Shown: positions 28,523 through 55,004 of the stretch, one piece after another
Layout of the letters: each line of letters begins with the position of its first letter
Numbering within the stretch: position 1 is the stretch's first letter
NCBI GenBank assembly: GCA_950097015.1
Contig: CATNEN010000001.1
Location: forward strand, 9,176,001 to 9,240,000
Direction of reading: 5' to 3'
DNA from: Macrostomum hystrix
Taxonomy: Eukaryota; Animalia; Platyhelminthes
DNA: 64,000 nucleotides
Made by a program: the position numbers and the translations under genes
Notes under the pieces: model-generated
What the model saw: the letters and a program-made list of their open reading frames with translations, nothing else
Told to the model about the DNA's origin: nothing
The model's database searches: none

Positions 28523-28574
<52 letters not shown>

Positions 28575-28889
28575 TATCGACCACGTCAAGGTCCGCCACC
28601 GCCGCTGCCGCCTAGAAAGTACTTAAGTAATACCGGCTCACCCGCTTCGCAAACACGACATCATCAAGATTTGCAGCAACAGCAGCAGCTGATGCCGCTG
28701 CAGAACGGTGGAGTTGGAGCTGCGCGTCACATCGCCATGGCAACCGCGACCGGCGTCGCTGGAAACCAGTTCGGCAGTCGCAGTTCGGTGCACGCCATGC
28801 AGTTCTATCAGCATTCGGCTAGCGGAATGGGCGCAGCCGCGGCTTTGGTTGCCCCGGGTGGCTCAAACTTAAGCGGCGATTTTCTTTAA
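26988..28889 (+). CDS. CABIT-domain protein (THEMIS/GAREM/Serrano-like), 633 aa, with polyQ and Pro-rich C-terminal tail
   Basis: Long non-repetitive ORF from ATG 26988. CABIT-like segments: DYSSGWFEVLNESG..YWTSVKDVARNKP and KCSDANGHLVFLNLEDKCAVSPVAGAENISGVHTLQSLLSKFQFPLSVRPVFG. Contains PPPPLPPRK, an SH3-ligand motif typical of THEMIS/GAREM. Confidence 0.8.
28520..28573 (+). repeat. Coding (CAG)n microsatellite encoding polyQ
   Basis: Run of CAG triplets in frame; further CAG runs at ~28080-28135, 28230-28280 and 28470-28500. Confidence 0.9.
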
Positions 28890-33749: not shown

Positions 33750-34165
33750 TATTATCAGACAGAACAGGTGTTAAACTGCTATCAGGCAGAACAGGTGTTA
33801 AACTGTTATCTGGCAGAACAGGTGTTAAACTGTTATCAGGCAGAACAGGTGTTAAACTGTTATCTGGCAGAACAGGTGTTAAACTGTTATCAGGCAGAAC
33901 AGGTGTTAAACTGTTATCAGGCAGAACAGGTGTTAAACTGTTATCAGGCAGAACAGGTGTTAAACTGTTATCAGGCAGAACAGGTGTTAAACTGTTATCA
34001 GGCAGAACAGGTGTTAAACTGTTATCAGGCAGAACAGGTGTTAAACTGTTATCTGGCAGAACAGGTGTTAAACTGTTATCAGGCAGAACAGGTGTTAAAC
34101 TGTTATCAGGCAGAACAGGTGTTAAACTGTTATCGGGCAGAACAGGTGTTAAACTGTTATCAGGA
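33750..34165. repeat. 27-bp minisatellite (gttatcaggcagaacaggtgttaaact), ~15 copies, directly upstream of the cGLR-caspase start codon
   Basis: Direct periodicity; degenerate copies from ~33660. Confidence 0.93.
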
Positions 34166-34252: not shown

Positions 34253-37200
34253 ATGGGCAATAAAATTGCCCGCGGTCATGAGGTAAGTCCCAGTGTGCGG
34301 CAGATTGGTCTTGGCGACTATTTGGACGGAGACACGCGTTCGCCAGAATCTCAGCTACTTGTAACAACAGAGAATGACGCGACTGATAACCCCGGAGAAG
34401 AGGCCCGGATTCAAAGCCGAGTTGAGGTAATGTTCAATCTGCTCAATTCGGTTGTTAAACCCAGCGAGCGGGATCTGTGGTGCACGCAAATGATTCGACA
34501 GGCGGCCTCCGAACGTCGGTGGCTAGTTGTGAAGCACATACTACAGTCGATTCCAGAGCCAACTGTACGGCAGCAATGCGCCGCGGAGGCCACGAAATGC
34601 GCAGTCACGTGGCAGGACTGGTCGGTGGCCCAAAGCCTAGTCCTTGCCGTTGTAAACTCTCGAGCTCGCCAGGCTATCTGCGCGGACGCTGTGAAATTCG
34701 CTGCTCAAGCCGGCAACCCAGAAGCCGTTGACGCCTTCGCTAGCCTAATTACAGATCAGACCGTTCTGGACGACTGCCTGAGCAAGGCGGCAGTTGCCGC
34801 TGCGGCCGTCAAAGGAGTCGACGACAATCGGGCTTCGTTGTCATTTAGGCTGACGAAAGAGATCAAGGATCCGGCCTTGAGAGATCAGTGCAGCAAAAAT
34901 GTGGCTAGCTTGTTCTCCCTGTGCGGTCGTTGGCACACAGTCGAGAACTTGGTGGAAGACATCGCTGATCAGTCACTCAAGAGCGCCTGCTACGCTGAGC
35001 TGGCTCCTCGAGCTGCGGAGTCGAATTGCTGGCAGATTGCGGCCAATCTGAGCACCAGCCCAGGTGAGCCATTAGAGAGGGAACAGGTGTGCTCAGAAGT
35101 GTTAAGCATAGCCGCCAGGAAGAATCAATTCCAAGAGCTGGCAGACGAGCTGCTCAAGACGATGTCAGATGCCGGCCGAGATAGCTGCTGCAGCGAATGC
35201 TCAACCCTGGCAGCATCCTGGGGCCACTGGGAGAGTGCGGGCGATGCTGCTCGTCGGATCTCAGACTCGCAGCTGCAGGACCACAGTCGAGTGATCGGTG
35301 CCAAGCGGGCTGCCGAGATGAAGAGCTGGCCGACAGCGTTGCAGTTTCTAAGCGGTATCGCGGACACAGACACCAGGAAAGCGTGCTTGAATGAGCTTGC
35401 TAACACTGTTGTAGAGAGCAAAGCCTATGATGTGGTGGCTCAGGTTGCTGCGCTAATTTCGAATGCTGACATCCGGTTTCAATACCTGTACAAGGCTGCG
35501 AGTCAAGGTATCGAAGATGGAAAAGTGGAAGTGGCCATTGACCTTCTGCAATTAATCGACGAACAGCAAGCTAGGGACCAGTGTTACAAGGACGCGACAC
35601 TTTTGTGCGCTTCGAGTGGCGACTGGGGACCCATTGTTCAGCTTGTCGGTCAAATTTCCCAGCAAACACTCAAAGACGAATGCTGCGCTGACTTAGTCGC
35701 ACTGGATGGCGCCCTGCAGCATCCTAATATTATTTTTCAACTGATAAATCTTGTAGACAGCGCACAAAGCAGGCATCTGTGCTGTTTGGCCTACGCCAAG
35801 GCGGCTGCCAGTAATATGGACCGCACGATGGTGTTCAGACTGAAGAGTTTGGTGACGGATTCGGCTGCGTTGGACAGGTGCTGGCAAGAAGCGGTCGCAC
35901 GCACTGCAACGCTCGGCTACTGGTCTGAAATTCCTCAATTTGTTGATCAAATCGGCAACGCGAAGATTCGAGACAACAGCCTGCGTTTTGCAGCGAAACT
36001 GGCATCGACCAGGCGAGACTACAAACTAGCAGAAGATTTCATAATAAAGATTTCGGACTCTGCAACAAAGGACGAATCTTATCTGCTGGCTGCGACCTCC
36101 GCTGCGACCTGGAGCGATTGGGATGAAGTTCATGGGCTGACTCTCTTCATAGACGATGAGAAATTGAAGGACCAGTGCTATGCCGAGTCCGCATTGGCAG
36201 CCTATAACAAAGGCAAATGGGACATTGCAGATCGCTTCGTGCAGCACATTCGCGACAGCGACACCAGAGATCAGTGCCTTATTCAATCCGCAAGATGTGC
36301 ATCAACGAAGCGTGAATGGCTAGAAGTGAAGCGGCTAACTAACAAATTTGAGAGCGTGAAAGTCAGGCAAGCTTGCATCTGTGACATTGTCAAGGCTGCC
36401 GCGGCACACCTTGTGCAAGACTGGGTAGAAGCCAAACAGTTTCTCAAATTTATTGTCGATTCGAAGATCCGGGATGAATGCTTGTTCGAAATAGCCGCCT
36501 ATGCGACTAGAAAAAACAACATAGATACCGCCAAACAAATTCTTGTTCAAATCCTTGATGTCGGATTTCTCGATAGCTGCTGCTTGGAGCTAGTTAAACT
36601 AGCGGCAGTCAGTGGACTGACCAACCTTTCTGAAATCATAAAGCTGGCCTCCTGTGAGAGTGCGGCTAATCTGTGCTCAGCCGAAGCTGTGAAGGCCGCA
36701 GCCCTGAGCGGTAGCTGGAATTTGGCGAAGCTGCAACTGCCGCTAGGGACAGATGTGCCAGGCATTTTCGCAGCCGGTTTCAAGACTGACCAGCTTGGCT
36801 TGGCTGAATGGCAGTTACGCAGTCTGTCCAACTGCGCCATCGCTGCAGAATGTGAGCAGTTGGTCACTGCCATTGTACAGGATATGAGGCACCTGCAGGT
36901 GGTACAGCTGCTTGACGAGTGCATCGCAGCTGGCCTATCAGCACTGGCCATTAAGTTAATCAAGTTGCGCTTCGAGCAGCCGGACCAACGCAACGAGTCT
37001 GGCAGCACTATTCTCATGCTGGCTGCTGACAGGAGCCGCGATGAGATCGTCAAGTTTTTGCTCGACTTCGGAGCTTCAGTTAGCGCAACGGACCCGCAGG
37101 GTCGGACCGCTCTGTCTCGAGCTTGTCTAGCCGGTCGAGCCAGAACGGTTAAGATTTTGATCGACGCAGGCTCAGATGTGAGACACTGCGATGCTGACGG

Positions 37201-37287
37201 CCTTTCTTGTGCTCAGCTAGCAAAGAGGGCTGGTCGGAGTGAGGTTCTGCGCTTGCTAGAACCGTCTGCTCCTGATCCCATGTCACG
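34253..37287 (+). CDS. Exon 1: ~23 x 33-aa TPR-like alpha-helical repeats followed by ~3 ankyrin repeats
   Basis: Repeat consensus I.D...RD.C....A..AA..g.W..a..l. Ankyrin motifs NESGSTILMLAA, DPQGRTALSRACLAG and DADGLSCAQLA. Donor GTATGT at 37288. Confidence 0.9.
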
Positions 37288-40200
37288 GTATGTGTGTACA
37301 TTCAACCTCCGAAATAGATACGCTCAGCATAACATTCAATTCGTCAATATGCACTGCTTGTAAATTTTAGTTTGCCAGAAAAAACCACGGAAATTTGTCG
37401 ACTTCCTTGCGAGTAAGAAATTTTGTTGTTGTAAAATTTGTCTTTCTCTAGTTGAATAATTCAAGCTTTCGAGTCATTTAAATAAGTGTCAGACTTAGGA
37501 CTGGGAGGTTGCGACTTTAATTACTAGTAGTGTGCTTATAATAATTGCAGGAGGGCTGTGGACATTAATGCATCACTTGGTGGCAGTAGAACCGCAGCCA
37601 GCGAGGAGGCAATTCTGCTCATTTCGCTGACTCCTGAGCACACAGGCATTCAGATACTCTTTCATCGTCAGGCAGTGAACACTCTCACTGTGTTCTTTAA
37701 GGAGGTTGGCCTTCAAGGGCATAAATTGCACGACAAGCCCCAAAGCCTTCTCTCCGCGGCAGCGCCCCCAAATGAATGTGGCCTTGCCGCAGAATCGAGC
37801 TCAGGAACCTCAGGTGCGAGAGGCAATGGTATTAGACCGTTCTGCCACTCATCGGCTTAGAAGCGCTGCGTAAAAGCTCTATTTGAGCCACTGAAATCTG
37901 GTCCAACTAGGCTTTAGGTTTTATTTCTTCTGAAAGCAGTCTTAACATCGGCAGAGTCGTTCAAAAATCGTTAAACAATTTTGTTTCAACTTTGTTAATC
38001 TTATATGAAATAAGAAGCAAAAACTGTTTTTCGAACCGTTTTTTCAGTAACTTAACAATGGACGACATGAGCCTAATTGTGCACCGGTTGCTAAATGAGG
38101 CGGGAATCACCGAGACTAGTGCCCACCAACAGCAAAGTCTTGGCTTCAGTTTAGAGTCGGCGGCAAGAGCGATCACTATGGAGGACAGGCACCTCGTTGG
38201 CAGCTGCATCGAGGGCTGGGGCTTCGGCCAGCTGGCATTGAGGCTGTTCGAAGCCAGCGGAAACAAAGACAGCGGAAACAAAGACAGCGACATCAACTGG
38301 ACGGTGCTAGTTGGCTCCAGACAGGAGCGGACATTTCATCTGGCCAAAAATTGCCAGTGCCAAGCCGAAACTGACTCTGACAATGGGATATTGCCAGCTG
38401 ATGTGAGCGAAGGCTGCGTCAAGATCATGGCTTCACGAATTGGTACGTTTTGCATCTCGACTGTACGTGTGGGTTTGCTTCGTACAATGACCACGGTGGC
38501 ATTTCAAATACCCACATTTTTTCTGTATCTCCCAAAATGTTCTACCAATTGCCATGACAATCCAGAATACGGGCTACAATTTTCTGCTCTATCCTGTGAC
38601 ACAACTTCCAAAATCACAGAACATCGGCCAAGTGCAGTCGAAATAAACCAAGCTATACGGATGCCAATTCCTTTTCATCTGATAGTTAAAATATTACGTA
38701 ATAATCAGTTTTTTACGGACAAACACAAACAGAACAGCACCAAGATTTTTGGGAAAACTTCTCGAAGATGGACCTTTGTGGAATCTTCTCGAAGCTGGAA
38801 GATCTTGTGGAATCTTCTCGAAGCTGGAAGATCTTGTGGAAGCTTCTCGAAGCTGGAAGATCTTGTGGAATCTTCTCGAAGCTGGAAGATCTTGTGGAAT
38901 CTTCTCGAAGCTGGAAGATCTTGTGGAAGCTTCTCGAAGCTGGGAGATCTTGTGGAATCTTCTCGAAGCTGGAAGATCTTGTGGAATCTTCTCGAAGCTG
39001 GAAGATCTTGTGGAATCTTCTCGAAGCTGGAAGATCTTGTGGAATCTTCTCGAAGCTGGAAGATCTTGTGGAATCTTCTCGAAGCTGGAAGATCTTGTGG
39101 AATCTTCTCGAAGCTGGAAGATCTTGTGGAATCTTCTCGAAGCTGGAAGATCTTGTGGAATCTTCTCGAAGCTGGAAGATCTTGTGGAATCTTCTCGAAG
39201 CTGGAAGATCTTGTGGAATCTTCTCGAAGCTGGAAGATCTTGTGGAATCTTCTCGAAGCTGGAAGATCTTGTGGAAGCTTCTCGAAGCTGGAAGATCTTG
39301 TGGAAGCTTCTCGAAGCTGGAAGATCTTGTGGAAGCTTCTCGAAGCTGGAAGATCTTGTGGAAGCTTCTCGAAGCTGGAAGATCTTGTGGAAGCTTCTCG
39401 AAGCTGGAAGATCTTGTGGAATCTTCTCGAAGCTGGAAGATCTTGTGGAATCTTCTCGAAGCTGGAAGATCTTGTGGAATCTTCTCGAAGCTGGAAGATC
39501 TTGTGGAATCTTCTCGAAGCTGGAAGATCTTGTGGAATCTTCTCGAAGCTGGAAGATCTTGTGGAAGCTTCTCGAAGCTGGAAGATCTTGTGGAATCTTC
39601 TCGAAGCTGGAAGATCTTGTGGAAGCTTCTCGAAGCTGGAAGATCTTGTGGAAGCTTCTCGAAGCTGGAAGATCTTGTGGAATCTTCTCGAAGCTGGAAG
39701 ATCTTGTGGAATCTTCTCGAAGCTGGAAGATCTTGTGGAATCTTCTCGAAGCTGGAAGATTTTGTGGAATCTTCTCGAAGCTGGAAGATCTTGTGGAAGC
39801 TTCTCGAAGCTGGAAGATCTTGTGGAATCTTCTCGAACCTGGAAGATCTTGTGGAATCTTCTCGAAGCTGGAAGATCTTGTGGAAGCTTCTCGAAGCTGG
39901 AAGATCTTGTGGAAGCTTCTCGAAGCTGGATGATCTTGTGGAATCTTCTCGAAGCTGGAAGATCTTGTGGAAGCTTCTCGAAGCTGGAAGATCTTGTGGA
40001 AGCTTCTCGAAGCTGGAAGATCTTGTGGAATCTTCTCGAAGCTGGAAGATCTTGTGGAAGCTTCTCGAAGCTTGGAGATCTTGTGGAATCTTCTCGAAGC
40101 TGGAAGATCTTGTGGAATCTTCTCGAAGCTGGAAGATCTTGTGGAAGCTTCTCGAAGCTGGAAGATCTTGTGGAAGCTTCTCGAAGCTGGAAGATCTTGT

Positions 40201-43200
40201 GGAAGCTTCTCGAAGCTGGAAGATCTTGTGGAAGCTTCTCGAACCTGGAAGATCTTGTGGAATCTTCTCGAAGCTGGAAGATCTTGTGGAAGCTTCTCGA
40301 AGCTGGAAGATCTTGTGGAAGCTTCTCGAAGCTGGAAGATCTTGTGGAAGCTTCTCGAAGCTGGAAGATCTTGTGGAAGCTTCTCGAAGCTGGAAGATCT
40401 TGTGGAAGCTTCTCGAAGCTGGGAGATCTTGTGGAATCTTCTCGAAGCTGGAAGATCTTGTGGAAGCTTCTCGAAGCTGGAAGATCTTGTGGAAGCTTCT
40501 CGAAGCTGGAAGATCTTGTGGAATCTTCTCGAAGCTGGAAGATCTTGTGGAAGCTTCTCGAAGCTGGAAGATCTTGTGGAAGCTTCTCGAAGCTGGAAGA
40601 TCTTGTGGAAGCTTCTCGAAGCTGGAAGATTTTGTGGAAGCTTCTCGAAGCTGGAAGATCTTGTGGAATCTTCTCGAAGCTGGAAGATCTTGTGGAATCT
40701 TCTCGAAGCTGGAAGATCTTGTGGAAGCTTCTCGAAGCTGGAAGATCTTGTGGAATCTTCTCGAAGCTGGAAGATCTTGTGGAAGCTTCTCGAAGCTTGG
40801 AGATCTTGTGGAATCTTCTCGAAGCTGGAAGATCTTGTGGAATCTTCTCGAAGCTGGAAGATCTTGTGGAAGCTTCTCGAAGCTTGGAGATCTTGTGGAA
40901 TCTTCTCGAACCTGGAAGATCTTGTGGAATCTTCTCGAAGCTGGAAGATCTTGTGGAAGCTTCTCGAAGCTGGAAGATCTTGTGGAAGCTTCTCGAAGCT
41001 GGAAGATCTTGTGGAAGCTTCTCGAAGCTGGAAGATCTTGTGGAAGCTTCTCGAAGCTGGAAGATCTTGTGGAAGCTTCTCGAAGCTGGAAGATCTTGTG
41101 GAATCTTCTCGAAGCTGGAAGATCTTGTGGAAGCTTCTCGAAGCTTGGAGATCTTGTGGAATCTTCTCGAACCTGGAAGATCTTGTGGAATCTTCTCGAA
41201 GCTGGAAGATCTTGTGGAAGCTTCTCGAAGCTGGAAGATCTTGTGGAAGCTTCTCGAAGCTGGAAGATCTTGTGGAAGCTTCTCGAAGCTGGAAGATCTT
41301 GTGGAAGCTTCTCGAAGCTGGAAGATCTTGTGGAAGCTTCTCGAAGCTGGAAGATCTTGTGGAATCTTCTCGAAGCTGGAAGATCTTGTGGAAGCTTCTC
41401 GAAGCTGGAAGATCTTGTGGAAGCTTCTCGAAGCTGGAAGATCTTGTGGAATCTTCTCGAAGCTGGAAGATCTTGTGGAAGCTTCTCGAAGCTGGAAGAT
41501 CTTGTGGAAGCTTCTCGAAGCTGGAAGATCTTGTGGAAGCTTCTCGAAGCTGGAAGATTTTGTGGAAGCTTCTCGAAGCTGGAAGATCTTGTGGAATCTT
41601 CTCGAAGCTGGAAGATCTTGTGGAATCTTCTCGAAGCTGGAAGATCTTGTGGAATCTTCTCGAAGCTGGAAGATCTTGTGGAAGCTTCTCGAAGCTTGGA
41701 GATCTTGTGGAATCTTCTCGAAGCTGGAAGATCTTGTGGAAGCTTCTCGAAGCTGGAAGATCTTGTGGAATCTTCTCGAAGCTGGAAGATCTTGTGGAAG
41801 CTTCTCGAAGCTGGAAGATCTTGTGGAATCTTCTCGAAGCTGGAAGATCTTGTGGAAGCTTCTCGAAGCTGGAAGATCTTGTGGAATCTTCTCGAAGCTG
41901 GAAGATCTTGTGGAATCTTCTCGAAGCTGGAAGATCTTGTGGAATCTTCTCGAAGCTGGAAGATCTTGTGGAATCTTCTCGAAGCTGGAAGATCTTGTGG
42001 AAGCTTCTCGAAGCTGGAAGATCTTGTGGAATCTTCTCGAAGCTGGAAGATCTTGTGGAAGCTTCTCGAAGCTGGAAGATCTTGTGGAAGCTTCTCGAAG
42101 CTGGAAGATCTTGTGGAAGCTTCTCGAAGCTGGAAGATCTTGTGGAATCTTCTCGAAGCTGGAAGATCTTGTGGAATCTTCTCGAAGCTGGAAGATCTTG
42201 TGGAATCTTCTCGAAGCTGGAAGATTTTGTGGAAGCTTCTCGAAGCTGGAAGATCTTGTGGAAGCTTCTCGAAGCTGGAAGATCTTGTGGAAGCTTCTCG
42301 AAGCTGGAAGATTTTGTGGAAGCTTCTCGAAGCTGGAAGATCTTGTGGAATCTTCTCGAAGCTGGAAGATCTTGTGGAATCTTCTCGAAGCTGGAAGATC
42401 TTGTGGAATCTTCTCGAAGCTGGAAGATCTTGTGGAATCTTCTCGAAGCTGGAAGATCTTGTGGAAGCTTCTCATAGCTTGGAGATCTTGTGGAATCTTC
42501 TCGATGCTGGAAGATCTTGTGGAATCTTCTCGAAGCTGGAAGATCTTGTGGAATCTTCTCGAAGCTGGAAGATCTTGTGGAAGCTTCTCGAAGCTGGAAG
42601 ATCTTGTGGAATCTTCTCGATGCTGGAAGATCTTGTGGAATCTTCTCGAAGCTGGAAGATCTTGTGGAAGCTTCTCGAAGCTGGAAGATCTTGTGGAAGC
42701 TTCTCGAAGCTGGAAGATTTTGTGGAAGCTTCTCGAAGCTGGAAGATCTTGTGGAAGCTTCTCGAAGCTGGAAGATCTTGTGGAAGCTTCTGGAAGCTGG
42801 AAGATTTTGTTGATATTTCTTGAAGCCTCATTATCGGGACGTGATTGAGTCGTCAAAAAAATTTTTGTACAGTATCTTAGTCGTATCCAAATATAATTTC
42901 CCGATATTTTTTGGTCTTTTCTATTGACCAACAGGCCAGGCTCCATTGAGAACAAAAGCTAGCGACTCGAGACTAAGCCAGACTGTGTGTCATGCATTTC
43001 GCTGCTGCAGCGCCTACGGAGCGGATCGCGTGAGGGTTCTTCTGCCAGCAGCCAGCTCGGTGCCTGTACACCTAGTCAGGGCACCGATGCCCAGCGCCGC
43101 CAACGAGCTAATGGTGAGCTTTAGCATTCAGGAACGACAGATAATGCAATCTTTGCACGCGGTGCAAGGCCAACTCTTTGTCCTGCTTAAGTTCATCTTT

Positions 43201-46200
43201 ACCAAGCTGCTGCCACTGCGCCTATCGGCAGTCGGACTCCGCAGCTACCACGCGAAGACTCTGCTATTCTACGTGATGGAAAAGTACAAGTTCAACATTG
43301 AAATTTGGCGCCCAGTTCGTCTGCTGCAGTTGCTGCTCGAGTCACTCAGTCTGATGCTGAATTTTTTAGACTCAGATAAGTCAGCAGATGCCTGCATGCC
43401 GCACTTCTTCATGCCGGACAGGCCATTGTACTTTCGTAACGCCGGTATCGGCGGAGACTTTAAAAACACCAAAGCTAGAGTGAGAAAGCGACTGTTAAAG
43501 TTAAGCATGGATCCTGACAATCTATTCTACATTATTCAAGAGTACGTTCACAATGCTCCGTCTGGAAAGTCTAGCTTTCAACCGTACATGCAGCTGCCAT
43601 TGGTCCTTCCACCTGAAATAGTCAACGTTGCCGAATATAAGCCTGCTGATTCGGGGTGCACTTCTGCCACCTATGGGGCTGTGTTCCGATGCCTGAAAAA
43701 GCTTCAATTTACTGAAACCGCAAGCCGTGAGGACCTCCTCGCTCAGATTTCAACTCTACCGGATACTTATGTCTGCGCTTCGACGTGTCTGAACGTGATG
43801 ATCTCCCTGAAGTTTAATGACTTCAGCGAAGCTGAGAAGGCATTGATTTGCTGGACAAGATCTGTCGAGGCAGACAGCGAGCAAAATGATCAGTTCTATC
43901 GATTCTGCCTGCCGTTTGACTCTAATTCAGCAGATTACCGCTATTTGCCAAAGTTTACTCAATCACTAATCACTGTAAGGGACTCAGGCAGTTCCTCAGC
44001 CCATGTTTATCTGAACTTTCGATGCCTATGCAGGAGTCTTCAGGCTGAAATCGTTGGCAATCACAACGTCAATAGTTGGCACGACCAAATGCGAAATGGT
44101 GATGATGCAGATTTTGAGGAGCTGCTAACACTAGCCCACTACAGCAACTGCCGAGAACACACCGACTTTTGTTTGAAACGCGCCGAGCTCCAAAATCAAG
44201 CGCAACGCATTCGAGACCAGATTGAAGATCGCAGCAGATTTGAGTGAGTCTTTAAATTGTGTCTTATTGGCATTGTTTATGTAGTGAGTCACTAGTTAAT
44301 AATCACAAGTATTTAGTTCCCACTCCTTGACTAGTTAGCCATCGCCGCTGTATGGTATAGACAAGGACAACTTAAGTATATATGCTACTTATGTTATGTT
44401 TTATTACTTGTATCATGTTACTTATGCATGTTACTTGACTAGTCCTTTGGTCTAGATTAGTCTCTCTTAGTAAATTAGTTCAAGTCCTAGGGTGTCAGTA
44501 TAGGAGAACTGTGGCTGGTATTTCCACGGTTTTTCCATGGCAGTTTTGGCCCTCCCACGGCAATTCTGCCTGCTTAAATCTTTCCAGCCAATGAGAGATT
44601 GAGATTGCCAAATGGCAGAGCTGAAAGGGATCCAAAACATATTATAAATCCGAGATACCCGAGGGCCCAAAAACTCATAGCGTGCGCGCAGCCGTGTCAA
44701 CTGCAGATAAGAGACCCATTCCTGTCTTAATTAGATTACTTAGTTCAGGAAGTTAACCTTTGGATAAAGGTTAATTCCTTAAGGTTTATCAGGCAACCCT
44801 CGATTTCTCCGTTCACAGCGCTGTTTTCTGTGTGGAAATTGTCCACAGAAATTGTTTCCGAAGTCTCGACTTACCGGACAATCGAACCTTCTGACCAAGG
44901 TGGCAGCAACCCTACCGTTTATTGCAGGTGTTTAATTTTCAGAAGCTTTTCTTAAGATTGGAGAAGTCTTCCCCTCTTGAAAAAATTCGAACCTCGCACT
45001 TACCAACTTGTTTAAAAAAGTAAGGGGAGACACTTAATTTATGCATAACTTTCGACTCACCCATTGTAAATTTACAGAAATCCGCACACATGGTCGGATG
45101 AGGAGCTTCTATTGCGCTGTCAACGACTAGCTGGTCACAACGAAGGATTGGCTCATCAACGCCGATTTAAACCGTTCAACGAGACACTGCTAACTGTAGT
45201 TGTTAAGAAAAACAACTTCGAATGTCTCCGGACGCTGCTCTCGGGCCATTCCGCCTTGACTATCGTTTCCGAACAGCCAGTCGACGTGTTCGGACGGACT
45301 GCGCTTGGTTGGGCTTGCAAACAAGGCAGTTCGGATGCTGTCAAATGTCTGCTTCAAGTACTGGGGCCATCTAGTTCCCCTGTTGTCAATCTGGGCGATA
45401 ATAGCGGTCAGACACCACTGATGCTGGCTGTAATTGGCGGTCACGATTGTGTGGTACACCTACTGACTACTTGGCCAGAAACAGGACTCAATATTAACCA
45501 AAAGGTGCGCTGTCTTGCATAAAAGTCCTTGTCTAACATCAGTTTTCTGTTCTGATGTCAACTAGAAAGGATATTTTTCTTCTCTCCAGGACATGGCTAA
45601 GAACACCGCACTGGTACATGCCTGTCGATGCGGTCACGCAGGCATTGTAGATATTCTTCTTCGAGGTGGCGCCTCAGCCACATCATTGGACGGATCTGAC
45701 GAGCTCAGTCATTTGGCGACGCCGCTCATCTGGGCAGCCAGATTTGGAAGGCTGGCAGTGATTGAAAAGCTCAAACCGGCTTTGAGTCGCCAAGCAGACT
45801 GGCTGGCAGTCGATGAGTACCAACGTACAGCTCTGCAGTGGGCCCAGTCAAGAAGTCATCTGGACTGTGCAAATTTCATTGACAGATGGTAAATTTTATT
45901 ATTTTATTTTGATTAATGTTCTTTTTTTAACTATACGCTCGTATAATATACTCATAGGGAGAAAATACGAGCTAATTATTTGCTAGTACGTCACACTCAC
46001 AGCTGGTACACACTCACAGCTGGTACACACTCACAACTGCAGCTTTATACACTCACAGCTGGTACATTCCAGTGCGACCTATGCTTTAAACATCCTTCCT
46101 TTGAAGCATTCGCGAGTTGCCGATTGGAATAGAAGGCCAGCCACTACCGCAGCTTAACCTGCCGTCATCTGAAGAAGTCAGCCCTGGAGCAAACGCTGGA

Positions 46201-46980
46201 CCTCCTGGAAGTACTATAAACCCAGGTAGTGGAAGGAACAACCGCAGTTCTGGCAGACTAGACGACGACACTCAGCCGCCTGATAGTTACGAAATCGGTG
46301 TGGTCAGTAACGGCCTGGCCATAATCATTAACAATGTGCGTTTTAGTGAGAACTCGAGCAGCCATATCAGCCAAAGACACGGTGCAAATGTTGACCAAGC
46401 GGATCTCGAAGTGCTGCTTCAACGACTCGGTTTCCACAATCTTAGAACGATGATTGACGCGGATCGTGAAGACATGGAGCAGATAAGCGTCAGTGAAGAG
46501 GACCTTCGGCAATGCAGCTCATTCCTAATGTTTATCATGTCGCATGGCTATCTAGATCATGTTTTCTCGCACGATGGCTACGCGATTAATCTCGAGCAGC
46601 AAATCTTTAGCCGATTTCGCCAGCTGGTAAATCTTAATGCCAAACCGAAGCTGTTCTTTGTGCAAGCCTGTCGAGGCCTAAATATACCAGGCACAGAAAC
46701 TCACACGGATGCTAGAAATCCTAGACTGCAAATAAGCAACCCCGAGGACTGCGTTTACTTCTATAGCACAGTCGAAGGTGGTCTTTCCGAAAGACGACCT
46801 GATGTCGGCAGCGCCTTCGTTCGGTCGATAGTAGAAGTGCTACAGCCCAATCAGTTATCCAGGATTCGATTTCTGGACCTAATGACCCGAGTGACAGACA
46901 AGGTTAGACAGCTAACGGAAAACGAGCAAACGCCTTGCACGCTTTCAACTCTGACAAGGCCATTGTTTTTGCATGTTTGA
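34253..46980 (+). CDS. Predicted multidomain protein (~2126-2147 aa): 33-aa helical repeats - ankyrin - Mab-21/cGAS-like (cGLR) domain - ankyrin - caspase. Exons 34253-37287, 37371-37412, 38048-38442, 42935-44243, [44957-45019], 45078-45504, 45590-45888, 46107-46980
   Basis: Every junction is GT-AG and phase-compatible (2,2,1,2,2,0,2). The exon sum is 6444 nt = 2148 codons with the optional 63-nt exon. The ankyrin exon at 45078 has no in-frame ATG upstream of its ankyrin repeats. A poly(A) signal AATAAA lies at 46988, just after the caspase stop. Confidence 0.7.
37640..37855 (-). mobile_element. tRNA-derived SINE (family A), intronic copy
   Basis: Clearly similar to 51085-51300 (aattgcacgacaagcc..ccttctctccgc..gcgcccc..ttgccgc.gaatcga). 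Degenerate B-box GAGCTCGATTC on the - strand. Confidence 0.75.
38048..38442 (+). CDS. Exon: N-terminal half of Mab-21/cGLR nucleotidyltransferase-like domain
   Basis: LVGSCIEGWG...KDSDINWTVLV corresponds to the hGS..EG...SDID motif of Mab-21/cGLR proteins. Acceptor ttttcag at 38047, donor GTACGT at 38443. Confidence 0.82.
38755..42815. repeat. 29-bp minisatellite (gaagatcttgtggaa[t/g]cttctcgaagctg), ~140 copies, intronic
   Basis: Direct periodicity; the unit is stop-free and generates 800-1600-aa pseudo-ORFs on both strands. Confidence 0.97.
42935..44247 (+). CDS. Exon: C-terminal part of Mab-21/cGLR domain and helical extension
   Basis: HLVRA..ELMVSFSIQERQIM; LLKFIF; GLRSYHAKTLLFY; W; CMPHFFMPDRPLYF match the Mab-21 signatures (WRlSFS..E, SYHlKT, PhYFiP..Nl). 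The TGA at 44245-44247 overlaps donor GTGAGT at 44244. Confidence 0.88.
45078..45888 (+). CDS. Ankyrin-repeat exons (45078-45504, 45590-45888), ~6 repeats
   Basis: DVFGRTALGWACKQG, DNSGQTPLMLAVIGGH, INQK|DMAKNTALVHACRCGH (repeat completed across the splice), TPLIWAARFG, DEYQRTALQWA. Confidence 0.9.
46107..46980 (+). CDS. Caspase (peptidase C14A, p20+p10) terminal exon
   Basis: GLAIIINNVRF, R.GA..D, catalytic MSHG (46540-46548), KPKLFFVQACRG (QACRG 46663-46677). p10 motifs YSTVEG.LS.R...GSAF and EQTP...STLTRPLF. Confidence 0.95.
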
Positions 46981-48459
46981 CGAACCCAATAAATACGTAT
47001 TTATCTAGTTGAAAGACACTTTCAGCAATCATGAAAAGTTGGCCAACGTAAATGCCAATTCTGAAACTATGTGTCGTGCACATGCAGATAATTCAACTGA
47101 AATTTCGACTATAACTGAACTCAATATATGTAATATTGTACTAGCGTGATGACGGTATAGCAAGATCATAACATAAAAAAATACTCGTACTTTATGCTCG
47201 ATGATAAAAATTAAAACGCGTGCACCTCAATTCATTTCTTATACAGAGTTTTCCAGAAATGCAGACCTGTTATAACTATCATTTGGATTTTAAAATTAAC
47301 AAATGATCTAATTTTCGTGCATAATTTCAGTTTTAATCGAAAGTCTAAAAATCCCTTGGCACGTTTCCGGCCTAAACGACGATGAAACGAAACACAAGAA
47401 TTGAATTTGTAGCATGTTCTGGTGCATCCATTAAACTGCGATTCTTTCATTCCTATTTTATTCTTTCCTTTGTTTTTATATTTAGATAGTCTTGCTCAGT
47501 TATTGACCGTTTAAAAATAATAATGCTAAATTATATACATTTTTATGACTTGCATACGTTTTTTTGAAAATTACCATGTTGGTTTTTATATACCAATATC
47601 AATTGAAAAAATACACTTTTTATGTTTATGTTTTCAAAAATATTCTTAGAACTGTTATCTATTTTGTGGGCTAACAGGCACGCAAATAATGGGTGCTACA
47701 AAACAGATGCAGTTTAGCGCATTGGAAGTCTTTTTTGGAAAGCGATCGATCGCGGATGCAATTGGGCACCCGTGTTGAGAACATGTTCTTTTTGATTTAC
47801 AAGGCTTCGTATTGTAAAATATATATATGTAGCTACATGCTGAATGCGCCGTTGAGAGAAAACTATATTGCTGGCTAATATGTACGTTAAGTGCTGGTGA
47901 ACTAGGATATTACTAGACATAGTATGGTTTAACTCTATCTTGTTTGTTGACCTCATGCCAAGGAAGGCATAGTTTTTTCTTCATTATTTATATTTTTTAC
48001 AAAACTATTTTTAGGTGCAATTAAAATTAAATATTTATTTCTAGTCTACGATATTTTTAAATACTCACTAGACTTACGAATTAAAGTGGCAACACAACTA
48101 TCAAGTTTTGTTGTACTGAGTAAATGCGTTAATTATCAAGCCTTAAATTTTTTGAAATGTACAGCGCATCGTCACTTTAAAAGTCACCGAATAACTTATG
48201 AACCGCAGACAACAGAGACAGGAGTAGTAAATTGCACAACATTAACGCATCCAAGAGAACGAACTGACATTTATTGACAAGAGCGAAACAAATTACTCTA
48301 CTATACTATAGTAGACCTATAGCTACTTCTAATTTCAGGATTTACTGAACCGAATATTGTAGTCTTGATTGGCCATCGTAATACATTATTTATAATAACA
48401 TTAATTTTTTTTGTTTCTTAGCAATAGGCAAACAAAAAATTTATAAGGTCAACCATAAA

Positions 48460-51400: not shown

Positions 51401-54400
51401 CACGGACTGAATAGCTGTACACAGCATTTGAAAGCGTCTGTGCCACTGGCTGTAATTTCTGGTTAGGTATAATTTCTAGTACATATTGATCACACTTACT
51501 AAAAGTATAATCTACAGAACTCGTAATTAGTAGGTTACTAGCTTAACAGTACGACTACCAAGCCATTTTGCCGCCCGTTTTTATACCAATTAACATAATA
51601 AATTAAATTCAGGGGGGTTTCCCCCCCCTGACATTTTTTTGGCAGCGCCCGAATGCTAACAGCGTTGGGTGGTGACTGATTGGTTGACAGACTAGGCGAT
51701 GGCTTGATCAGTGAAATTAGATAAATTCGCGTCATGGTTTCCATAGAGGCCTAGTTCCACCTGTTGTAGCCCTTGAAAGTCCAGCAGTCCGTCTAGATAA
51801 AAGTAGCTGACCACCGAAGACGGAGATGATGCAGGCACATTCGGGTGACATTCTGATAAAGTTTGAAGGCCTGGCAAGGCCGCACTGAGGCGCAGTGCAA
51901 ATTCGTGTATAGGGGTGTATGAAATACACTAGCTCTTATGGGAAAAATCGGACCTTCGGCCAGAAACATTGAATATCTCGACGGTCTGAAGAGCCTGCGA
52001 CTTGTTTATTGTTTCAGAAGATGCGCAACAAAGAGTTGGCCCGTGTTCTTGAGTTTCGTGTGCTTGCGTTGTTCCGTTCGGGTGCAGCAAAAAATTGTCA
52101 GTGGGGAATTCCGCCCCCCGGTAGTTCTACTGTTAATCAAACTCTAGGTTAATACGGAAGATAAAGTTATATATAATCTACTCTACTGTATGTAATAAAT
52201 AAATATTCTTTTGGTTTGAAAGCATTCTACTAGCAAAAAACTGTGCCTATTTGCAGGCTTTGATACAGAAAATTTGGGTAATAAATTTATTGTATAAAAT
52301 GTTTTCATTCAGTGTGTGTGTGTGTGCGTGTGTGTGTCTTGGTGTCTGGTTTCTAGTGATTGTGTGCGTGCTTCAGTGGAAATTTCACACGGATCATATA
52401 TTTCCACACAATGCCATTGACAAACCGTATTCATTTATTTACGAGATTGTGTATGATTGGAATAGAAGAAATATACCCCTCATTCTTTAAACAATCAGTC
52501 TATCTACCGATTGAAAATAAAACAAATCTATTGTCAGTTTTTTCACTTTGTCGCCAAAAACATGGTATCATGTACTTCTTATACTACTGATTTTGTAAAT
52601 ATAATCTTTCTTATTTCAGTGCTGACCAAACAGCTATTGCCATTAAAGATTATGAGTAAGAATTGCTTAATATTCTTAGCGGGTTTAAAATGTGATTTTT
52701 TTTAAGTCTTTTTTTTTAATCAAGTCTGATTATGCCGTTATGCCGTTCTTTGCGTTTAGGCCAAAGGTATTTTTTCAAAACTAGAATGACTTAATATCTA
52801 ATGATATTGTTTGGTGACTGGCTTGAATTTTGTATACTTGATGCTTAATGTAAAGAGTTAATATATTACAACATGGGTCTTATTTAAGGGGGTATTAAAA
52901 ACATTAGGGCATCAACTAATTAGCCACTAATATTTTTGTAACAGTTAACAATTGTGTTGCGCAAAATTTCAATGATAATTCTTACAAGTACATGCCGTTT
53001 TCGATTGGTTAGTTTAGATTTAGCATTCTTTTGAATCTTAGTCGCATTAGATGCTTTTAGTATTTTTTAGTTTATAATGATGAAGATTCGCGTAATTTAG
53101 CCAAATGCTGCTATTTTTCCAGGTTTTTGTCAGGCAATTCGCCAAAACATTTTAAATTGAGACTGTGAACTTTTTTAGCAGTGTAGTAGATGTAGGGTTA
53201 GACAGGTAGATGTAGGGTAGACAGGTAGATGTAGGGTAGACAGGTAGATGTAGGGTAGACAGGTAGATGTAGGGTAGACAGTGTGGTAGATGTAGGGTAG
53301 ACAGTGTGGTAGGTGTAGGGTAGACAGTGTGGTAGATGTAGGCTAGACAGTGTGGTAGGTGTAGGGTAGACAGAGTGGTAGATGTAGGGTAGACAGTGTG
53401 GTAGATGTAGGGTAGACAGTGTGGTAGATGTAGGGTAGACAGTGTGGTAGATGTAGGGTAGACAGTTTGGTAGATGTAGGGTAGACAGTTTGGTAGATGT
53501 AGGGTAGACAGTGTGGTAGGTGTAGGGTAGACAGTGTGGTAGATGTAGGGTAGACAGTGTGGTAGATGTAGGGTAGACAGTTTGGTAGATGTAGGGTAGA
53601 CAGTGTGGTAGATGTAGGGTAGACAGTGTGGTAGATGTAGGGTAGACGGTGTGGTAGATGTAGGGTAGACAGTGTGGTAGATGTAGGGTAGACAGTGTGG
53701 TAGGTGTAGGGTAGACAGTGTGGTAGATGTAGGGTAGACAGTGTGGTAGATGTAGGGTAGACAGTTTGGTAGATGTAGGGTAGACAGTGTGGTAGATGTA
53801 GGGTAGACAGTTTGGTAGATGTAGGGTAGACGGTGTGGTAGATTTAGAGTAGACAGTTTGGTAGATGTAGGGTAGACTGTGTGGTAGATGTAGGGTAGAC
53901 AGTGTGGTAGATGTAGGGTAGACAGTTTGGTAGATGTAGGGTAGACAGTGTGGTAGGTGTAGGGTAGACAGTGTGGTAAATGTAGGGTAGGTTTGAGGTA
54001 GACGTGGGTCAGATTCAAAGTAGGCATTGCGGCTAATTTCTTATATTGAAGTAGAAAAATTAGTTTGTTGACAGTGTAAGAAATGATTTCCAGTTTACTG
54101 CATATTTTTTAAGTTTGAAATTAGTTTTCAGACGAATTGTCAGCGAATAAAAGAATTGGCAGCTGTTCTACCTTGTTTGATTGTTTTAGCCCAAAGTCAG
54201 TGCCTGGAGATTCGTGTGTATCACCGCCTCATCTCGGGCCTACACACCAGCATCAACACTCACCTGTCGCACAAGTACCTACTGTTGGATCCTCAGGACC
54301 GCATGCTGGGCAGGCAGAACTGGGGCCCGAATGTCACCGAGTTTCTAGTCAGATTTCATCCGGATTTCGAGCCCCAGGGTCCTGTTAGGCTGCGAAATCT

Positions 54401-54878: not shown

Positions 54879-55004
54879 TTTCATTGAACTACTTTATTTC
54901 AATCCTCGTTTCAAATAAGAATTCAAAATCCCTGAGCTGTCGGAAAATCTTCTAAATCTCGAAAACTGGTTTGCATGTCTGTTTTCTTATCTTAAAATTC
55001 ATTT

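What the first reader, a model, noticed from the sequence alone, without database searches (positions are those of the whole stretch)
34253..46980. Single-chain helical-repeat/ANK - cGAS-like receptor - ANK - caspase fusion: candidate self-contained immune/cell-death system
Seen: the apparent stop of the Mab-21 ORF (TTT GAG TGA, 44239-44247) overlaps a consensus donor GA|GTGAGT. That phase-2 donor joins in frame to the ankyrin exon at 45078 (tttacag|A AAT CCG), directly or via a symmetric 63-nt exon 44957-45019. The ankyrin exons then join in frame (TG|gtaaat...ccttcctttgaag|C ATT CGC) to a caspase with intact His/Cys dyad. Upstream, a 3-kb repeat/ANK exon links by phase-matched introns to the two Mab-21 exons. 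Established: cGAS/cGLR and bacterial CD-NTases are nucleic-acid/infection sensors that signal through cyclic nucleotides to separate effectors (STING; CBASS Cap effectors), and initiator caspases are normally recruited through CARD/DED domains. Inference: sensor, cGLR fold and death protease sit in one polypeptide, so ligand-driven oligomerisation could dimerise the caspase directly, bypassing STING and adaptors. I do not recall this architecture being characterised. Even if these are two genes, a cGLR directly beside an ANK-caspase would be a CBASS-like pairing in an animal.
Basis: partly seen in the sequence, partly recalled or inferred. Interest (0 to 1): 0.93.

Follow-up and report, generated by a model that had tools for sequence, protein, structure and literature searches.

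The report
Flatworm cGAS-like sensor-caspase fusion gene
A free-living flatworm gene (very probably Macrostomum hystrix) appears to encode one 2,112-residue protein joining a long helical-repeat array, a cGAS-like domain with a degenerate catalytic site, ankyrin repeats and an intact caspase; this could link sensing directly to cell death, and none of the papers I searched describes it.

Summary
Six exons on the + strand (34253-46980) all have AG/GT borders. They join in one frame of 2,112 codons with no internal stop.

The fusion is supported indirectly:
- The Macrostomum lignano orthologue PAA93319.1 (2,111 aa) comes from an RNA-seq-based model. It reads colinearly through the same junctions.
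- Three paralogous copies in this genome keep the same exon order and splice phases, with introns of only 115-130 nt.
- The ankyrin exon has no usable start codon, and the spliced-leader ATG would be out of frame.

The cGAS/Mab-21 fold is confirmed on a family member (VIA Z 20.4 to cGAS). The 'cGLR enzyme' reading is not. About 85-90% of more than 100 paralogues keep GS...DxD...D. Every caspase-bearing copy has lost two of the three acids. The window copy has D-I-N, then Thr.

The caspase keeps SHG, QACRG and the Asp-pocket arginines.

Best reading: a pseudo-cGLR sensor scaffold that activates its own caspase by proximity. This function is inferred.

The scan had already noted the paralogous copies 6 Mb upstream on the same contig. 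I found no paper describing this architecture.

The parts
34253..37287 (+). Exon 1. Start ATG with MGNKIA, which fits the N-myristoylation motif M-G-x-x-x-[S/T/A]. About 24 copies of a 33-residue helical repeat follow (residues ~60-860). Ankyrin repeats occupy residues ~900-977. The donor is CG|gtatgt, phase 2.
   Evidence: ORF and sequence. The orthologue P0024 starts MGNQNS. BLOSUM autocorrelation peaks at offsets 33, 66 and 99. Pfam ANK E 1e-14. The Atlas gives only weak TPR/HEAT-like leads, below 0.9.
38048..38442 (+). Exon 2: N-lobe of the Mab-21/cGAS-like domain. It holds the spine helix, GS at 38199-38204 and D-I-N at 38289-38297, where the family has D-I-D. A copy-specific GNKDS-GNKDS duplication lies at 38259-38288. 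The donor is ATT G|gtacgt, phase 1.
   Evidence: Sequence. Alignment of 30 paralogue N exons, with GS invariant and SDID at least 90% conserved. 46 of 50 distinct paralogues have DxD. Secondary structure of the P0029 model: beta1-GS-helix-beta2 starting with DID.
38758..42810 (.). 29-nt minisatellite, about 140 copies, that fills most of intron 2. It creates the long spurious ORFs on both strands.
   Evidence: TRF: period 29, 139.8 copies, 96% matches. ORF list.
42935..43458 (+). Exon 3, first part. It carries the strand that holds the third catalytic Asp in the family (PAxDxxxA). Here that position is Thr, at 42982-42984. The Mab-21 C-lobe follows (HLVR, SFS.QE, YHAKT motifs).
   Evidence: Alignments A1 and A4. 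Pfam Mab-21_C 23.5 bits. A profile of exon-3 paralogues hits only cGLR1, cGAS and MAB21L1 in PDB, apart from one non-significant row (E 0.006-0.09).
43459..44243 (+). Exon 3, second part: a family-specific, mostly helical domain of about 260 residues (WAWRFC...YVNFRC motifs). It ends at the phase-2 donor TTT GA|gtgagt. The apparent stop TGA at 44245-44247 is part of that donor.
   Evidence: AF2 model of this stretch: pLDDT 83.1. No clear solved relative: Foldseek best E 0.15; VIA best Z 7.6, generic TPR-like. Donor read.
45078..45504 (+). Exon 4: ankyrin repeats. It opens with N-P-H-T-W-S-D-E-E-L, a motif conserved at the start of this exon in all copies. There is no in-frame ATG before residue ~113. 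An in-frame TAA lies 4 codons upstream of the acceptor.
   Evidence: Pfam ANK_2 E 1e-23. Sequence. The same motif occurs in L030 (YPDQWTNEEL), L029 (FPDQWTDEEL), P0024 (YPNDWSEEYL) and P0031 (RPQDWSDEDL).
45590..45888 (+). Exon 5: ankyrin repeats. The donor is ATG|gtaaat, phase 2.
   Evidence: Pfam ANK_2 E 2e-13. The junction ...TG|gt...ag|C AT is conserved in L030 and gives C-I-R in P0024 and P0031.
46107..46980 (+). Exon 6: a low-complexity linker, then the caspase domain. His of SHG is at 46543-46545. Cys of QACRG is at 46669-46671. The stop TGA is at 46978-46980.
   Evidence: Peptidase_C14 E 1.4e-35. phmmer to human caspase-3, E 4e-25, covers the whole protease. R-x-G...D, SHG, QACRG and S-x-R...GS-x-F all align.
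46988..46993 (+). AATAAA, 8 nt after the stop: the likely poly(A) signal of the whole gene. There is no AATAAA or ATTAAA in 44244-45077.
   Evidence: Pattern count.

Best explanation
One gene of six exons (34253-46980, + strand) most likely encodes a single 2,112-residue protein. The genome is a Macrostomum flatworm. Its size and contig number match the published M. hystrix assembly.

Domain order:
- an N-terminal myristoylation-type motif;
- about 24 helical repeats of 33 residues;
- ankyrin repeats;
- a cGAS/Mab-21-fold domain;
- a family-specific helical domain;
- ankyrin repeats;
- a caspase.

Shown:
- the exon structure and the open frame;
- the same architecture in the M. lignano orthologue and in a second, older paralogue lineage in both species;
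- the cGAS-like fold of the family;
- an intact caspase active site.

Inferred:
- The Mab-21 domain is a pseudo-enzyme. Of the GS / D-x-D / D signature it keeps GS and one Asp, with Asn and Thr replacing the other two acids.
- It therefore makes no nucleotide messenger. It serves as a ligand-binding or oligomerising scaffold.
- Binding of an unknown ligand by the repeat array and/or the Mab-21 platform brings several chains together.
- The C-terminal caspases are then activated by induced proximity, without CARD/DED adaptors or STING.
- The likely context is innate immunity or another conflict-driven cell-death response. The gene belongs to a family of more than 100 copies that is expanded in this lineage.
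For: Gene model:
- All borders are AG/GT. The frame is 2,112 codons with no stop, against 2,111 aa in the orthologue.

Orthologue:
- P0024 (M. lignano PAA93319.1) is 53% identical in exon 3. It carries ANK + Mab-21_C + ANK + Peptidase_C14.
- These BOX15 models derive from RNA-seq assemblies that were cut at observed spliced-leader and poly(A) sites (PMC5730564).

Paralogues:
- Of more than 100 Mab-21-like copies, only the window and three copies at C1:3.09-3.125 Mb are followed by ANK-ANK-caspase.
- In L030 and L029 the Mab-21 to ANK intron is about 115-130 nt, with the same phase-2 donor and the same acceptor phase.

No independent start for the ANK-caspase part:
- The window's ANK exon has a TAA 4 codons upstream of the acceptor and no in-frame ATG for about 113 codons.
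- The Macrostomum spliced leader ends in ATG (PMC8629364). Joined to 45078 it reads AAA TCC ... TGA, which is out of frame.
- A stand-alone ANK-caspase elsewhere does have its own ATG just before the same motif, MHFSPSSPEKWSDQQL.
- There is no AATAAA or ATTAAA between 44244 and 45077. There is one 8 nt after the final stop.

Fold:
- AF2 model of family member P0029: pLDDT 88.6.
- Foldseek top hits are cGAS, E 2e-7.
- VIA Z 20.4, rmsd 3.4 A, 261 residues, spanning the whole cGAS catalytic domain. Oyster cGLR1 scores Z 19.6.

Catalytic site:
- 46 of 50 distinct own-genome N exons have DxD.
- 77 of 91 M. lignano members have GS-D-D-D. All four caspase-bearing ones have GS-D-N-S/T.
- The window has D-I-N and Thr.
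- The third Asp aligns with the DIVFAL motif of a canonical PF03281 protein.

Age of the fusion:
- Window + P0024 form one clade. L029/L030/L032 + P0031/P0174/P0294 form another (SH-aLRT 100 and 99).
- Holding all eight together gives a better likelihood, p-AU 0.74.
- The fusion therefore predates the split of the two species and is compatible with a single origin.

Caspase:
- It aligns to caspase-3 over the whole domain with all catalytic and S1 residues.
Against:
- The Mab-21 to ANK intron is 834 nt here, against about 115-130 nt in the paralogues.
- Macrostomum has many operons with spacers of about 100 nt that are resolved by SL trans-splicing (PMC8629364). Adjacency alone would therefore be unremarkable.
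- The L029 copy has an AATAAA inside the short intron.
- The window's own Mab-21 domain was not folded, because its two exons were not joined. The fold rests on a paralogue that is 43% identical.
- Pfam Mab-21_C is just under its cut-off for the window. PF03281 does not hit.
- The N-exon profile alone finds nothing in PDB.
- The third catalytic position is assigned from motif, strand order and alignment to a canonical Mab-21 protein. It is not assigned from a residue-level structural superposition.
- The link between caspase fusion and loss of the acids rests on only one or two independent evolutionary events.
- Ligand, oligomerisation, caspase activation and an immune role are all untested.
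Confidence: 0.65

Rival explanations
1. Two genes, not one. A repeat-ANK-Mab-21 gene ends at TGA 44245-44247. A separate ANK-caspase gene follows, either with its own promoter or as the downstream gene of an operon resolved by spliced-leader trans-splicing at 45078.
For: - The ORF does end at TGA.
- Macrostomum has many operons and SL trans-splicing.
- Stand-alone ANK-caspases exist in this genome and in other flatworms (PMC11463336).
- There are no reads for this locus.
Against: - The TGA is part of a consensus donor.
- The ANK exon has no in-frame ATG for about 113 codons and has an in-frame TAA just upstream.
- The SL's ATG is out of frame.
- The coding motif xPxxW[ST]xE[ED]L starts right at the acceptor in all copies.
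- Four M. lignano RNA-based models read through the junction, although that pipeline cuts at SL and poly(A) sites.
- There is no poly(A) signal in the 834-nt gap.
Confidence: 0.1
2. The protein is fused, but the Mab-21 domain is still an active cGLR. It makes a nucleotide signal with a non-canonical active site, and that signal acts on STING-like or other receptors. The caspase is a second output.
For: - GS and the first Asp are kept.
- The fold is cGAS-like.
- A STING_LBD-like ORF exists in the genome, at 26 bits, just under the cut-off.
Against: - Two of the three metal-binding acids are replaced, by Asn and Thr. The same kind of loss is seen in every caspase-bearing copy of both species.
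- About 85-90% of the other paralogues keep all three.
- From established knowledge of cGAS and OAS, loss of these acids abolishes catalysis.
Confidence: 0.08
3. The protein is fused, but it is not a primary sensor. It is the effector arm of the large family. Its dead Mab-21 domain either binds a nucleotide made by the catalytically intact paralogues or pairs with them (cGAS-type dimers). That switches on the caspase.
For: - More than 100 paralogues have an intact GS/DxD/D signature, and only four loci carry a caspase.
- The kinase-fused member P0297 has also lost the acids. Members that carry an effector domain are thus the ones with a dead site.
- From my own knowledge, the inactive Mab-21 relative MiD51 binds ADP.
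Against: - The protein carries its own full-length repeat array, like the presumed sensors.
- No binding or pairing was tested.
- No NTase-fold receptor for cyclic nucleotides is known to me.
Confidence: 0.12
4. The fusion protein has a non-immune role, for example developmental or germline/neoblast cell death, or reproductive conflict. The expansion of the family reflects that role.
For: - MAB21L1/2 and MiD49/51 are non-immune Mab-21 proteins (PMC10732462).
- Nothing here ties the gene to infection.
Against: The family is large, clustered in tandem and fast-diverging, with variable repeat arrays and swapped effector domains: caspase, kinase, RING. That is the usual pattern of conflict or immune gene families. 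This argument is inference only.
Confidence: 0.1

Closest known systems
Animal cGAS-like receptors (cGLRs), including the minority fused to ANK, TPR or death domains (Li et al. 2023, bioRxiv 10.1101/2023.02.22.529553)
   Same: - Bilobal cGAS/Mab-21 fold (Z about 20 to cGAS and to oyster cGLR1).
- GS motif.
- N-terminal repeat modules.
- Membership of a family expanded in one lineage.
   Different: - Two of the three catalytic acids are missing, so probably no nucleotide product is made.
- A caspase sits on the same chain, instead of signalling through STING.
- That paper states that most platyhelminths have no cGLRs beyond Mab21-like proteins.
Platyhelminth 'ANK caspases' (PMC11463336; first seen in Schistosoma)
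   Same: - Ankyrin repeats lie directly N-terminal to an intact caspase domain, with no CARD or DED.
- The same ANK-ANK-caspase module also occurs alone in this genome (L073).
   Different: - Here the module is the C-terminal third of a 2,112-residue protein, behind a Mab-21 domain and a repeat array.
- The paper regards ANK caspases as specific to parasitic flatworms.
- I did not test monophyly with those published caspases.
Oyster DED-TRADD-N-Mab-21-TPR proteins (Kaur et al. 2021, PMC8195603)
   Same: A Mab-21/cGAS domain is combined with helical repeats and cell-death signalling modules in one chain, within a lineage-specific expansion.
   Different: Those proteins carry adaptor (death-fold) domains that would recruit a caspase. 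Here the protease itself is fused.
Catalytically inactive Mab-21 proteins (MAB21L1, MiD49/51)
   Same: The NTase fold is kept while catalytic residues are lost, and the domain is used as a scaffold or receptor.
   Different: They belong to unrelated subfamilies, carry no caspase and no repeat array, and have developmental or mitochondrial roles.
Apoptosome and inflammasomes (Apaf-1/caspase-9, NLRC4 or NLRP1/caspase-1); bacterial CBASS
   Same: The proposed logic is the same: a ligand-driven sensor assembly activates a caspase by proximity. CBASS shares the pairing of a cGAS-type NTase with a death effector.
   Different: - Those systems use separate polypeptides, with CARD/PYD adaptors or a diffusible nucleotide.
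- Here no adaptor domain is present and the NTase looks dead.

Membership tests
cGLR / Mab-21 superfamily | Bilobal cGAS-like nucleotidyltransferase fold | tested here: met
   The AF2 model of family member P0029 has pLDDT 88.6. P0029 is 43% identical to the window's exon 3. Foldseek gives cGAS at E 2e-7. VIA gives Z 20.4, rmsd 3.4 A over 261 residues, covering mouse cGAS 149-506. The window's own two Mab-21 exons were not joined or folded.
cGLR / Mab-21 superfamily | Match to the Pfam Mab-21 models (PF03281 NTase domain, PF20266 C-terminal domain) above the curated cut-off | tested here: inconclusive
   PF20266 scores 23.5 bits against a 24.1 cut-off in exon 3. PF03281 gives no hit at E below 0.1. 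Several related family members pass PF20266 (30.8, 27.2 and 32.8 bits; 28.7 bits for P0026). The exon-3 profile hits only cGLR1, cGAS and MAB21L1 in PDB, apart from one non-significant row.
cGLR (as a signalling enzyme) | Catalytic signature G[GS] ... [DE]-h-[DE] ... [DE] | tested here: not met
   GS is present. D-I-N replaces D-I-D. Thr sits at the third-acid position. 77 of 91 M. lignano members and 46 of 50 own-genome N exons keep the acids. All caspase-bearing copies lack two of them.
cGLR (as a signalling enzyme) | Ligand-dependent synthesis of a nucleotide second messenger | not testable with these tools
   Needs biochemistry.
Caspases (peptidase C14A) | Peptidase_C14 domain above the cut-off, with the His (SHG) / Cys (QACRG) dyad | tested here: met
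   PF00656 scores 123.5 bits against a 21.4 cut-off. SHG and QACRG align with caspase-3 His121 and Cys163 (residue numbers from my own knowledge).
Caspases (peptidase C14A) | Asp-specific S1 pocket (Arg in R-x-G..D, Gln of QACRG, Arg in S-x-R..GSWF) | tested here: met
   sqRhGanvD, QACRG and SeRrpdvGSaF align with the caspase-3 motifs.
Initiator caspases of the classical kind | CARD or DED prodomain | tested here: not met
   No CARD or DED hit in any exon. ANK repeats take the place of a prodomain.
Platyhelminth ANK caspases | Ankyrin repeats directly N-terminal to the caspase domain | tested here: met
   Exons 4 and 5 are ANK and exon 6 is the caspase. I did not test whether this caspase groups with the published ANK caspases.
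CBASS-like NTase + effector pair | Active CD-NTase whose nucleotide product activates the neighbouring effector | tested here: not met
   The NTase signature is degenerate (see above). The effector is on the same chain. Nucleotide dependence is not testable here.

The most novel reading that the evidence does not exclude
The caspase-bearing pseudo-cGLRs are the death-effector arm of a very large flatworm cGLR network. Their dead NTase pocket has become a receptor for a nucleotide made by the 100 or more catalytically intact paralogues, or a docking partner for those paralogues. That would be a route from cGLR to caspase cell death without STING, in an animal phylum thought to have lost cGLR signalling.
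Probability: 0.12. Interest if true: 0.92.

Novelty: new variant of a known kind. Interest (0 to 1): 0.78.

Why it matters
If the protein works as proposed, it would be a one-chain counterpart of an inflammasome or apoptosome. A pattern-recognition-type module would be wired straight to a caspase with no adaptor and no second messenger. That would be a clear natural example of a cGAS-family domain reused as a non-enzymatic scaffold.

It also shows that Macrostomum carries more than 100 Mab-21/cGLR-like genes, most with an intact catalytic signature. That contrasts with the published view that most flatworms lack cGLRs.

Effector-bearing members (caspase, kinase) lose the catalytic acids while the other paralogues keep them. 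This gives a testable evolutionary rule: enzyme or effector, not both.

M. lignano has transgenesis and RNAi, so the orthologue Mlig026614 can be tested directly.

Tried and rejected
Tools that did not run:
I could not inspect the intron positions of the M. lignano orthologue.

Searches that gave nothing useful:
- The caspase exon against the big protein database found nothing closer than 33% identity among proteins of 158-502 aa. No same-species transcript fragment turned up.
- P0024 residues 1400-2111 as query, and P0031 and alignment A3 against PDB, were swamped by ankyrin proteins and told me nothing.
- The N-exon profile alone finds no solved relative.
- The helical domain after the Mab-21 C-lobe has no clear solved relative. 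I do not claim it is a new fold.
- The Atlas search of the 33-residue repeat array gave only weak TPR/HEAT-like leads.

Exon models rejected:
- The 63-nt exon 44957-45019 is in frame. Its 21 residues have no counterpart in P0024, P0031 or the paralogues, so I rejected it as a constitutive exon.
- I considered the ORF at 37558-37860 as an extra exon between exons 1 and 2 and dropped it. The direct join is in phase, and the orthologue has only about 14 more residues there.

Handling of the joined model:
- I did not search or fold the joined spliced protein.
- In scripts I concatenated the exon coordinates only to count length and in-frame stops. The joined sequence was not printed, saved or sent to any tool.

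Full report
**What is in the sequence**

Between 34253 and 46980 the + strand carries six open stretches. Their ends are all consensus splice sites.

| Exon | Coordinates | 3' end |
|---|---|---|
| 1 | 34253-37287 | CG\|gtatgt |
| 2 | 38048-38442 | ATT G\|gtacgt |
| 3 | 42935-44243 | TTT GA\|gtgagt |
| 4 | 45078-45504 | AAG\|gtgcgc |
| 5 | 45590-45888 | ATG\|gtaaat |
| 6 | 46107-46977 | followed by TGA |

- The phases match at every junction. The frame is 6,336 nt, or 2,112 codons, without an internal stop.
- I concatenated coordinates in a script only to count length and stops. The joined protein was not kept, searched or folded. All searches were done exon by exon.
- Intron 2 is filled by a 29-nt minisatellite of about 140 copies (38758-42810). 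This explains the huge spurious ORFs on both strands.
- An AATAAA follows the final stop by 8 nt. There is no AATAAA or ATTAAA in the 834 nt between exons 3 and 4.

**Domains**

- Pfam finds ankyrin repeats at the end of exon 1 and in exons 4 and 5.
- It finds Mab-21_C in exon 3, at 23.5 bits against a cut-off of 24.1.
- It finds Peptidase_C14 in exon 6, at E 1.4e-35.
- Most of exon 1 (residues ~60-860) is an array of about 24 helical repeats of 33 residues. BLOSUM autocorrelation peaks at 33, 66 and 99. Pfam does not name this array, and the Atlas only weakly likens it to TPR/HEAT solenoids.
- The protein starts MGNKIA, which fits the N-myristoylation motif. The orthologue starts MGNQNS. This is a sequence observation only.

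**Organism and family**

- The window is contig 1, 9,176,001-9,240,000, of a 220,453,370-base assembly in 42 contigs. This matches the published Macrostomum hystrix assembly of about 220 Mb in 42 contigs (PMC10468722).
- All close database relatives are M. lignano proteins.
- Exon 3 has more than 100 paralogues in this genome, mostly on contig 1. Exon 1 and exon 2 have matching sets.
- Only four loci combine a Mab-21 exon with a downstream caspase. These are the window and three tandem copies at C1:3.09-3.125 Mb.

**Is it one gene?**

The evidence is therefore comparative.

1. The orthologue.
   - An exhaustive HMMER search with exon 3 returns P0024 as best hit (M. lignano PAA93319.1, 2,111 aa). 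The match lies at residues 1149-1575, with 536 residues left over.
   - P0024 has ANK, Mab-21_C, ANK and Peptidase_C14.
   - Its sequence crosses both critical junctions just as predicted here.
   - P0031, P0174 and P0294 are further M. lignano Mab-21-ANK-caspase proteins.
   - These models come from RNA-seq-based transcripts. They were cut wherever spliced-leader or poly(A) reads were seen, and ORFs were then called on them (PMC5730564).
2. The paralogues.
   - In L030 and L029 the exon order is the same.
   - The Mab-21 exon ends at a phase-2 donor, AAA GAA AG|gtaagt or |gtaggt.
   - The ANK exon begins after an acceptor only about 115-130 nt away, with the conserved peptide [YF]PDQWT[ND]EEL.
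   - The junction from ANK to caspase, TG|gt...ag|C AT, is conserved too.
3. No independent start.
   - The window's ANK exon cannot start translation. An in-frame TAA lies four codons before the acceptor, and the first in-frame ATG is about 113 codons in.
   - The Macrostomum spliced leader ends in ATG (PMC8629364). Joined to 45078 it reads into a TGA after eight codons. The same is true for L030 and L029.
   - A stand-alone ANK-caspase on contig 38 has its own ATG eight codons before the same motif.
4. Age.
   - In a tree of exon-3 regions, the window pairs with P0024 (SH-aLRT 100). The 3.1-Mb copies pair with P0031/P0174/P0294 (SH-aLRT 99).
   - Each fused lineage is therefore older than the split of the two species.
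   - Forcing all eight into one clade improves the likelihood, p-AU 0.74. A single ancient fusion is compatible with the data. Long branches make this uncertain.

I put the single-gene reading at about 0.85-0.9. The main rival is an operon of two genes. Operons are common in this genus, with spacers of about 100 nt.

**Is it a cGLR?**

Fold: yes.
- An AF2 model of the family member P0029 (709 aa, 78-row alignment) has pLDDT 88.6.
- Its best Foldseek hits are all cGAS, at E about 2e-7.
- VIA-align gives Z 20.4, rmsd 3.4 A over 261 residues. This covers model residues 112-421 against mouse cGAS 149-506. Oyster cGLR1 (8gjw) scores Z 19.6.
- A profile of exon-3 paralogues hits only cGLR1, cGAS and MAB21L1 in PDB, apart from one non-significant row.

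Enzyme: probably not.
- In the model, GS (153-154) follows beta1, and D175-I-D177 opens beta2. This is the classical NTase arrangement.
- The third acid, D236, lies in a strand with the motif PAxDxxxA. That strand aligns with the DIVFAL motif of a canonical PF03281 protein.
- 46 of 50 distinct own-genome N exons have DxD.
- 77 of 91 M. lignano members have GS-D-D-D.

The caspase-bearing copies are the exceptions:

| Copy | DxD position | Third-acid position |
|---|---|---|
| Window | D-I-N | Thr |
| P0024 | D-I-N | Thr |
| L029 | D-I-N | Ser |
| L030 / L032 | N-I-D | Ser |
| P0031 / P0174 / P0294 | D-[MI]-N | Ser |

- The kinase-fused P0297 is degenerate as well, with D-I-G and Ser.
- From established knowledge of cGAS and OAS, loss of these acids abolishes catalysis. 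I therefore read the domain as a conserved pseudo-enzyme.
- The statistical weight is limited, because the losses trace to one or two events.
- The third position is assigned by motif and strand order, not by superposition.

**The rest of exon 3 and the caspase**

- Residues 172-433 of exon 3 fold confidently (pLDDT 83.1) into a mostly helical domain. It has no clear solved relative: Foldseek best E 0.15, VIA best Z 7.6, generic TPR-like.
- The caspase aligns with human caspase-3 over the full protease, at E 4e-25. R-x-G..D, SHG, QACRG and S-x-R..GS-x-F are all in place.
- There is no CARD or DED.

**How it most likely works (inferred)**

- The repeat array, the dead cGAS-like platform or both bind an unknown ligand.
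- Binding drives self-association of several chains.
- The caspase domains, held at the C-terminus behind ankyrin repeats, are activated by induced proximity. Initiator caspases are activated the same way on the apoptosome or on inflammasomes.
- The N-terminal Gly suggests membrane tethering.
- The family context argues for a role in immunity or another genetic conflict. The family is large, clustered in tandem, has variable repeat arrays and carries exchangeable effector domains: caspase, kinase, RING.

Alternatives:
- The protein is the effector arm for the catalytically intact paralogues, through a nucleotide or through Mab-21 pairing.
- The site is still active.
- The role is not immune.

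A STING_LBD-like ORF exists elsewhere in the genome, at 26 bits, just under the cut-off.

**Comparison with what is known**

- cGLRs fused to ANK, TPR or death domains are published. The same paper says that most platyhelminths have no cGLRs beyond Mab21-like proteins.
- Flatworm ANK caspases are published, but are described as specific to parasites. A kinase-prodomain caspase of M. lignano is noted in the same paper.
- Oyster proteins combine DED-TRADD-N, Mab-21 and TPR.
- None of the papers found by six searches describes a Mab-21 domain fused to a caspase.
- The M. lignano proteins exist in databases only as 'hypothetical' or 'Caspase family p20 domain-containing'.

**Earlier notes of this scan**

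- After I had reached these conclusions, a look-up showed that the scan had already examined the paralogous copies about 6 Mb upstream (s1-846601, s1-846602).
- Those notes report an expressed ANK-cGAS-like-ANK-caspase gene with a broken catalytic site.
- I checked those loci myself for junctions and catalytic residues, but not for expression.
- Two further notes list ANK-cGLR genes elsewhere in the genome.
- These are unverified notes and I do not count them as evidence.

**Verdict**

- The fusion is well supported but lacks direct RNA proof at this locus.
- 'cGLR' holds for the fold and the family, not for the enzyme.
- The architecture is a new variant built from known immune and cell-death modules.

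Noticed in passing
G000 contig 1 and others (places listed); loci L012-L022, L033-L072: The genome holds more than 100 Mab-21/cGAS-like paralogues, most preceded by the same kind of repeat/ANK exon. 46 of 50 distinct N exons keep GS...SDID. [quoted passage not shown]
   Followed up: partly
M. lignano P0297; L073:3182-6013 and 1731-2372 (-): A protein-kinase-fused member of the Mab-21 family (P0297) has also lost the catalytic acids (D-I-G, Ser). On contig 38 of this genome, kinase exons lie directly upstream of a caspase exon. A stand-alone ANK-caspase with its own ATG sits next to them.
   Followed up: partly
G000:C2:9104529-9104996 (-), locus L075:1501-1968: An ORF matches the STING ligand-binding domain at 26.2 bits (cut-off 27, E 5.7e-6). 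It is a possible divergent STING in a flatworm.
   Followed up: partly
window 8186-32687, 33752-34164, 38758-42810, 53179-64000: Minisatellite arrays cover a large share of the window (32 TRF rows). Examples: a 27-nt array ending 89 nt before the start codon, the 29-nt x 140 array in intron 2, and a 24-nt x 271 array running off the window's end.
   Followed up: no
window 26973-28886 (+), 54156-54875 (+), 1987-2655 (+): Neighbouring coding stretches: a CABIT-domain ORF (E 1.3e-9), an ERO1 exon (E 4.8e-68), and a weak hit to a NACHT N-terminal helical domain (18 bits, below the cut-off).
   Followed up: no
window 38259-38288: A tandem duplication GNKDS-GNKDS sits in the loop just before the D-I-N motif. 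It was not seen in any of the 29 other N exons aligned, nor in the orthologue.
   Followed up: no
L029:3450-4960 (-): This caspase-linked paralogue has an AATAAA inside its short intron between Mab-21 and ANK. Its second ANK stretch seems to run straight into the caspase exon, so its exon structure differs from the window's.
   Followed up: no
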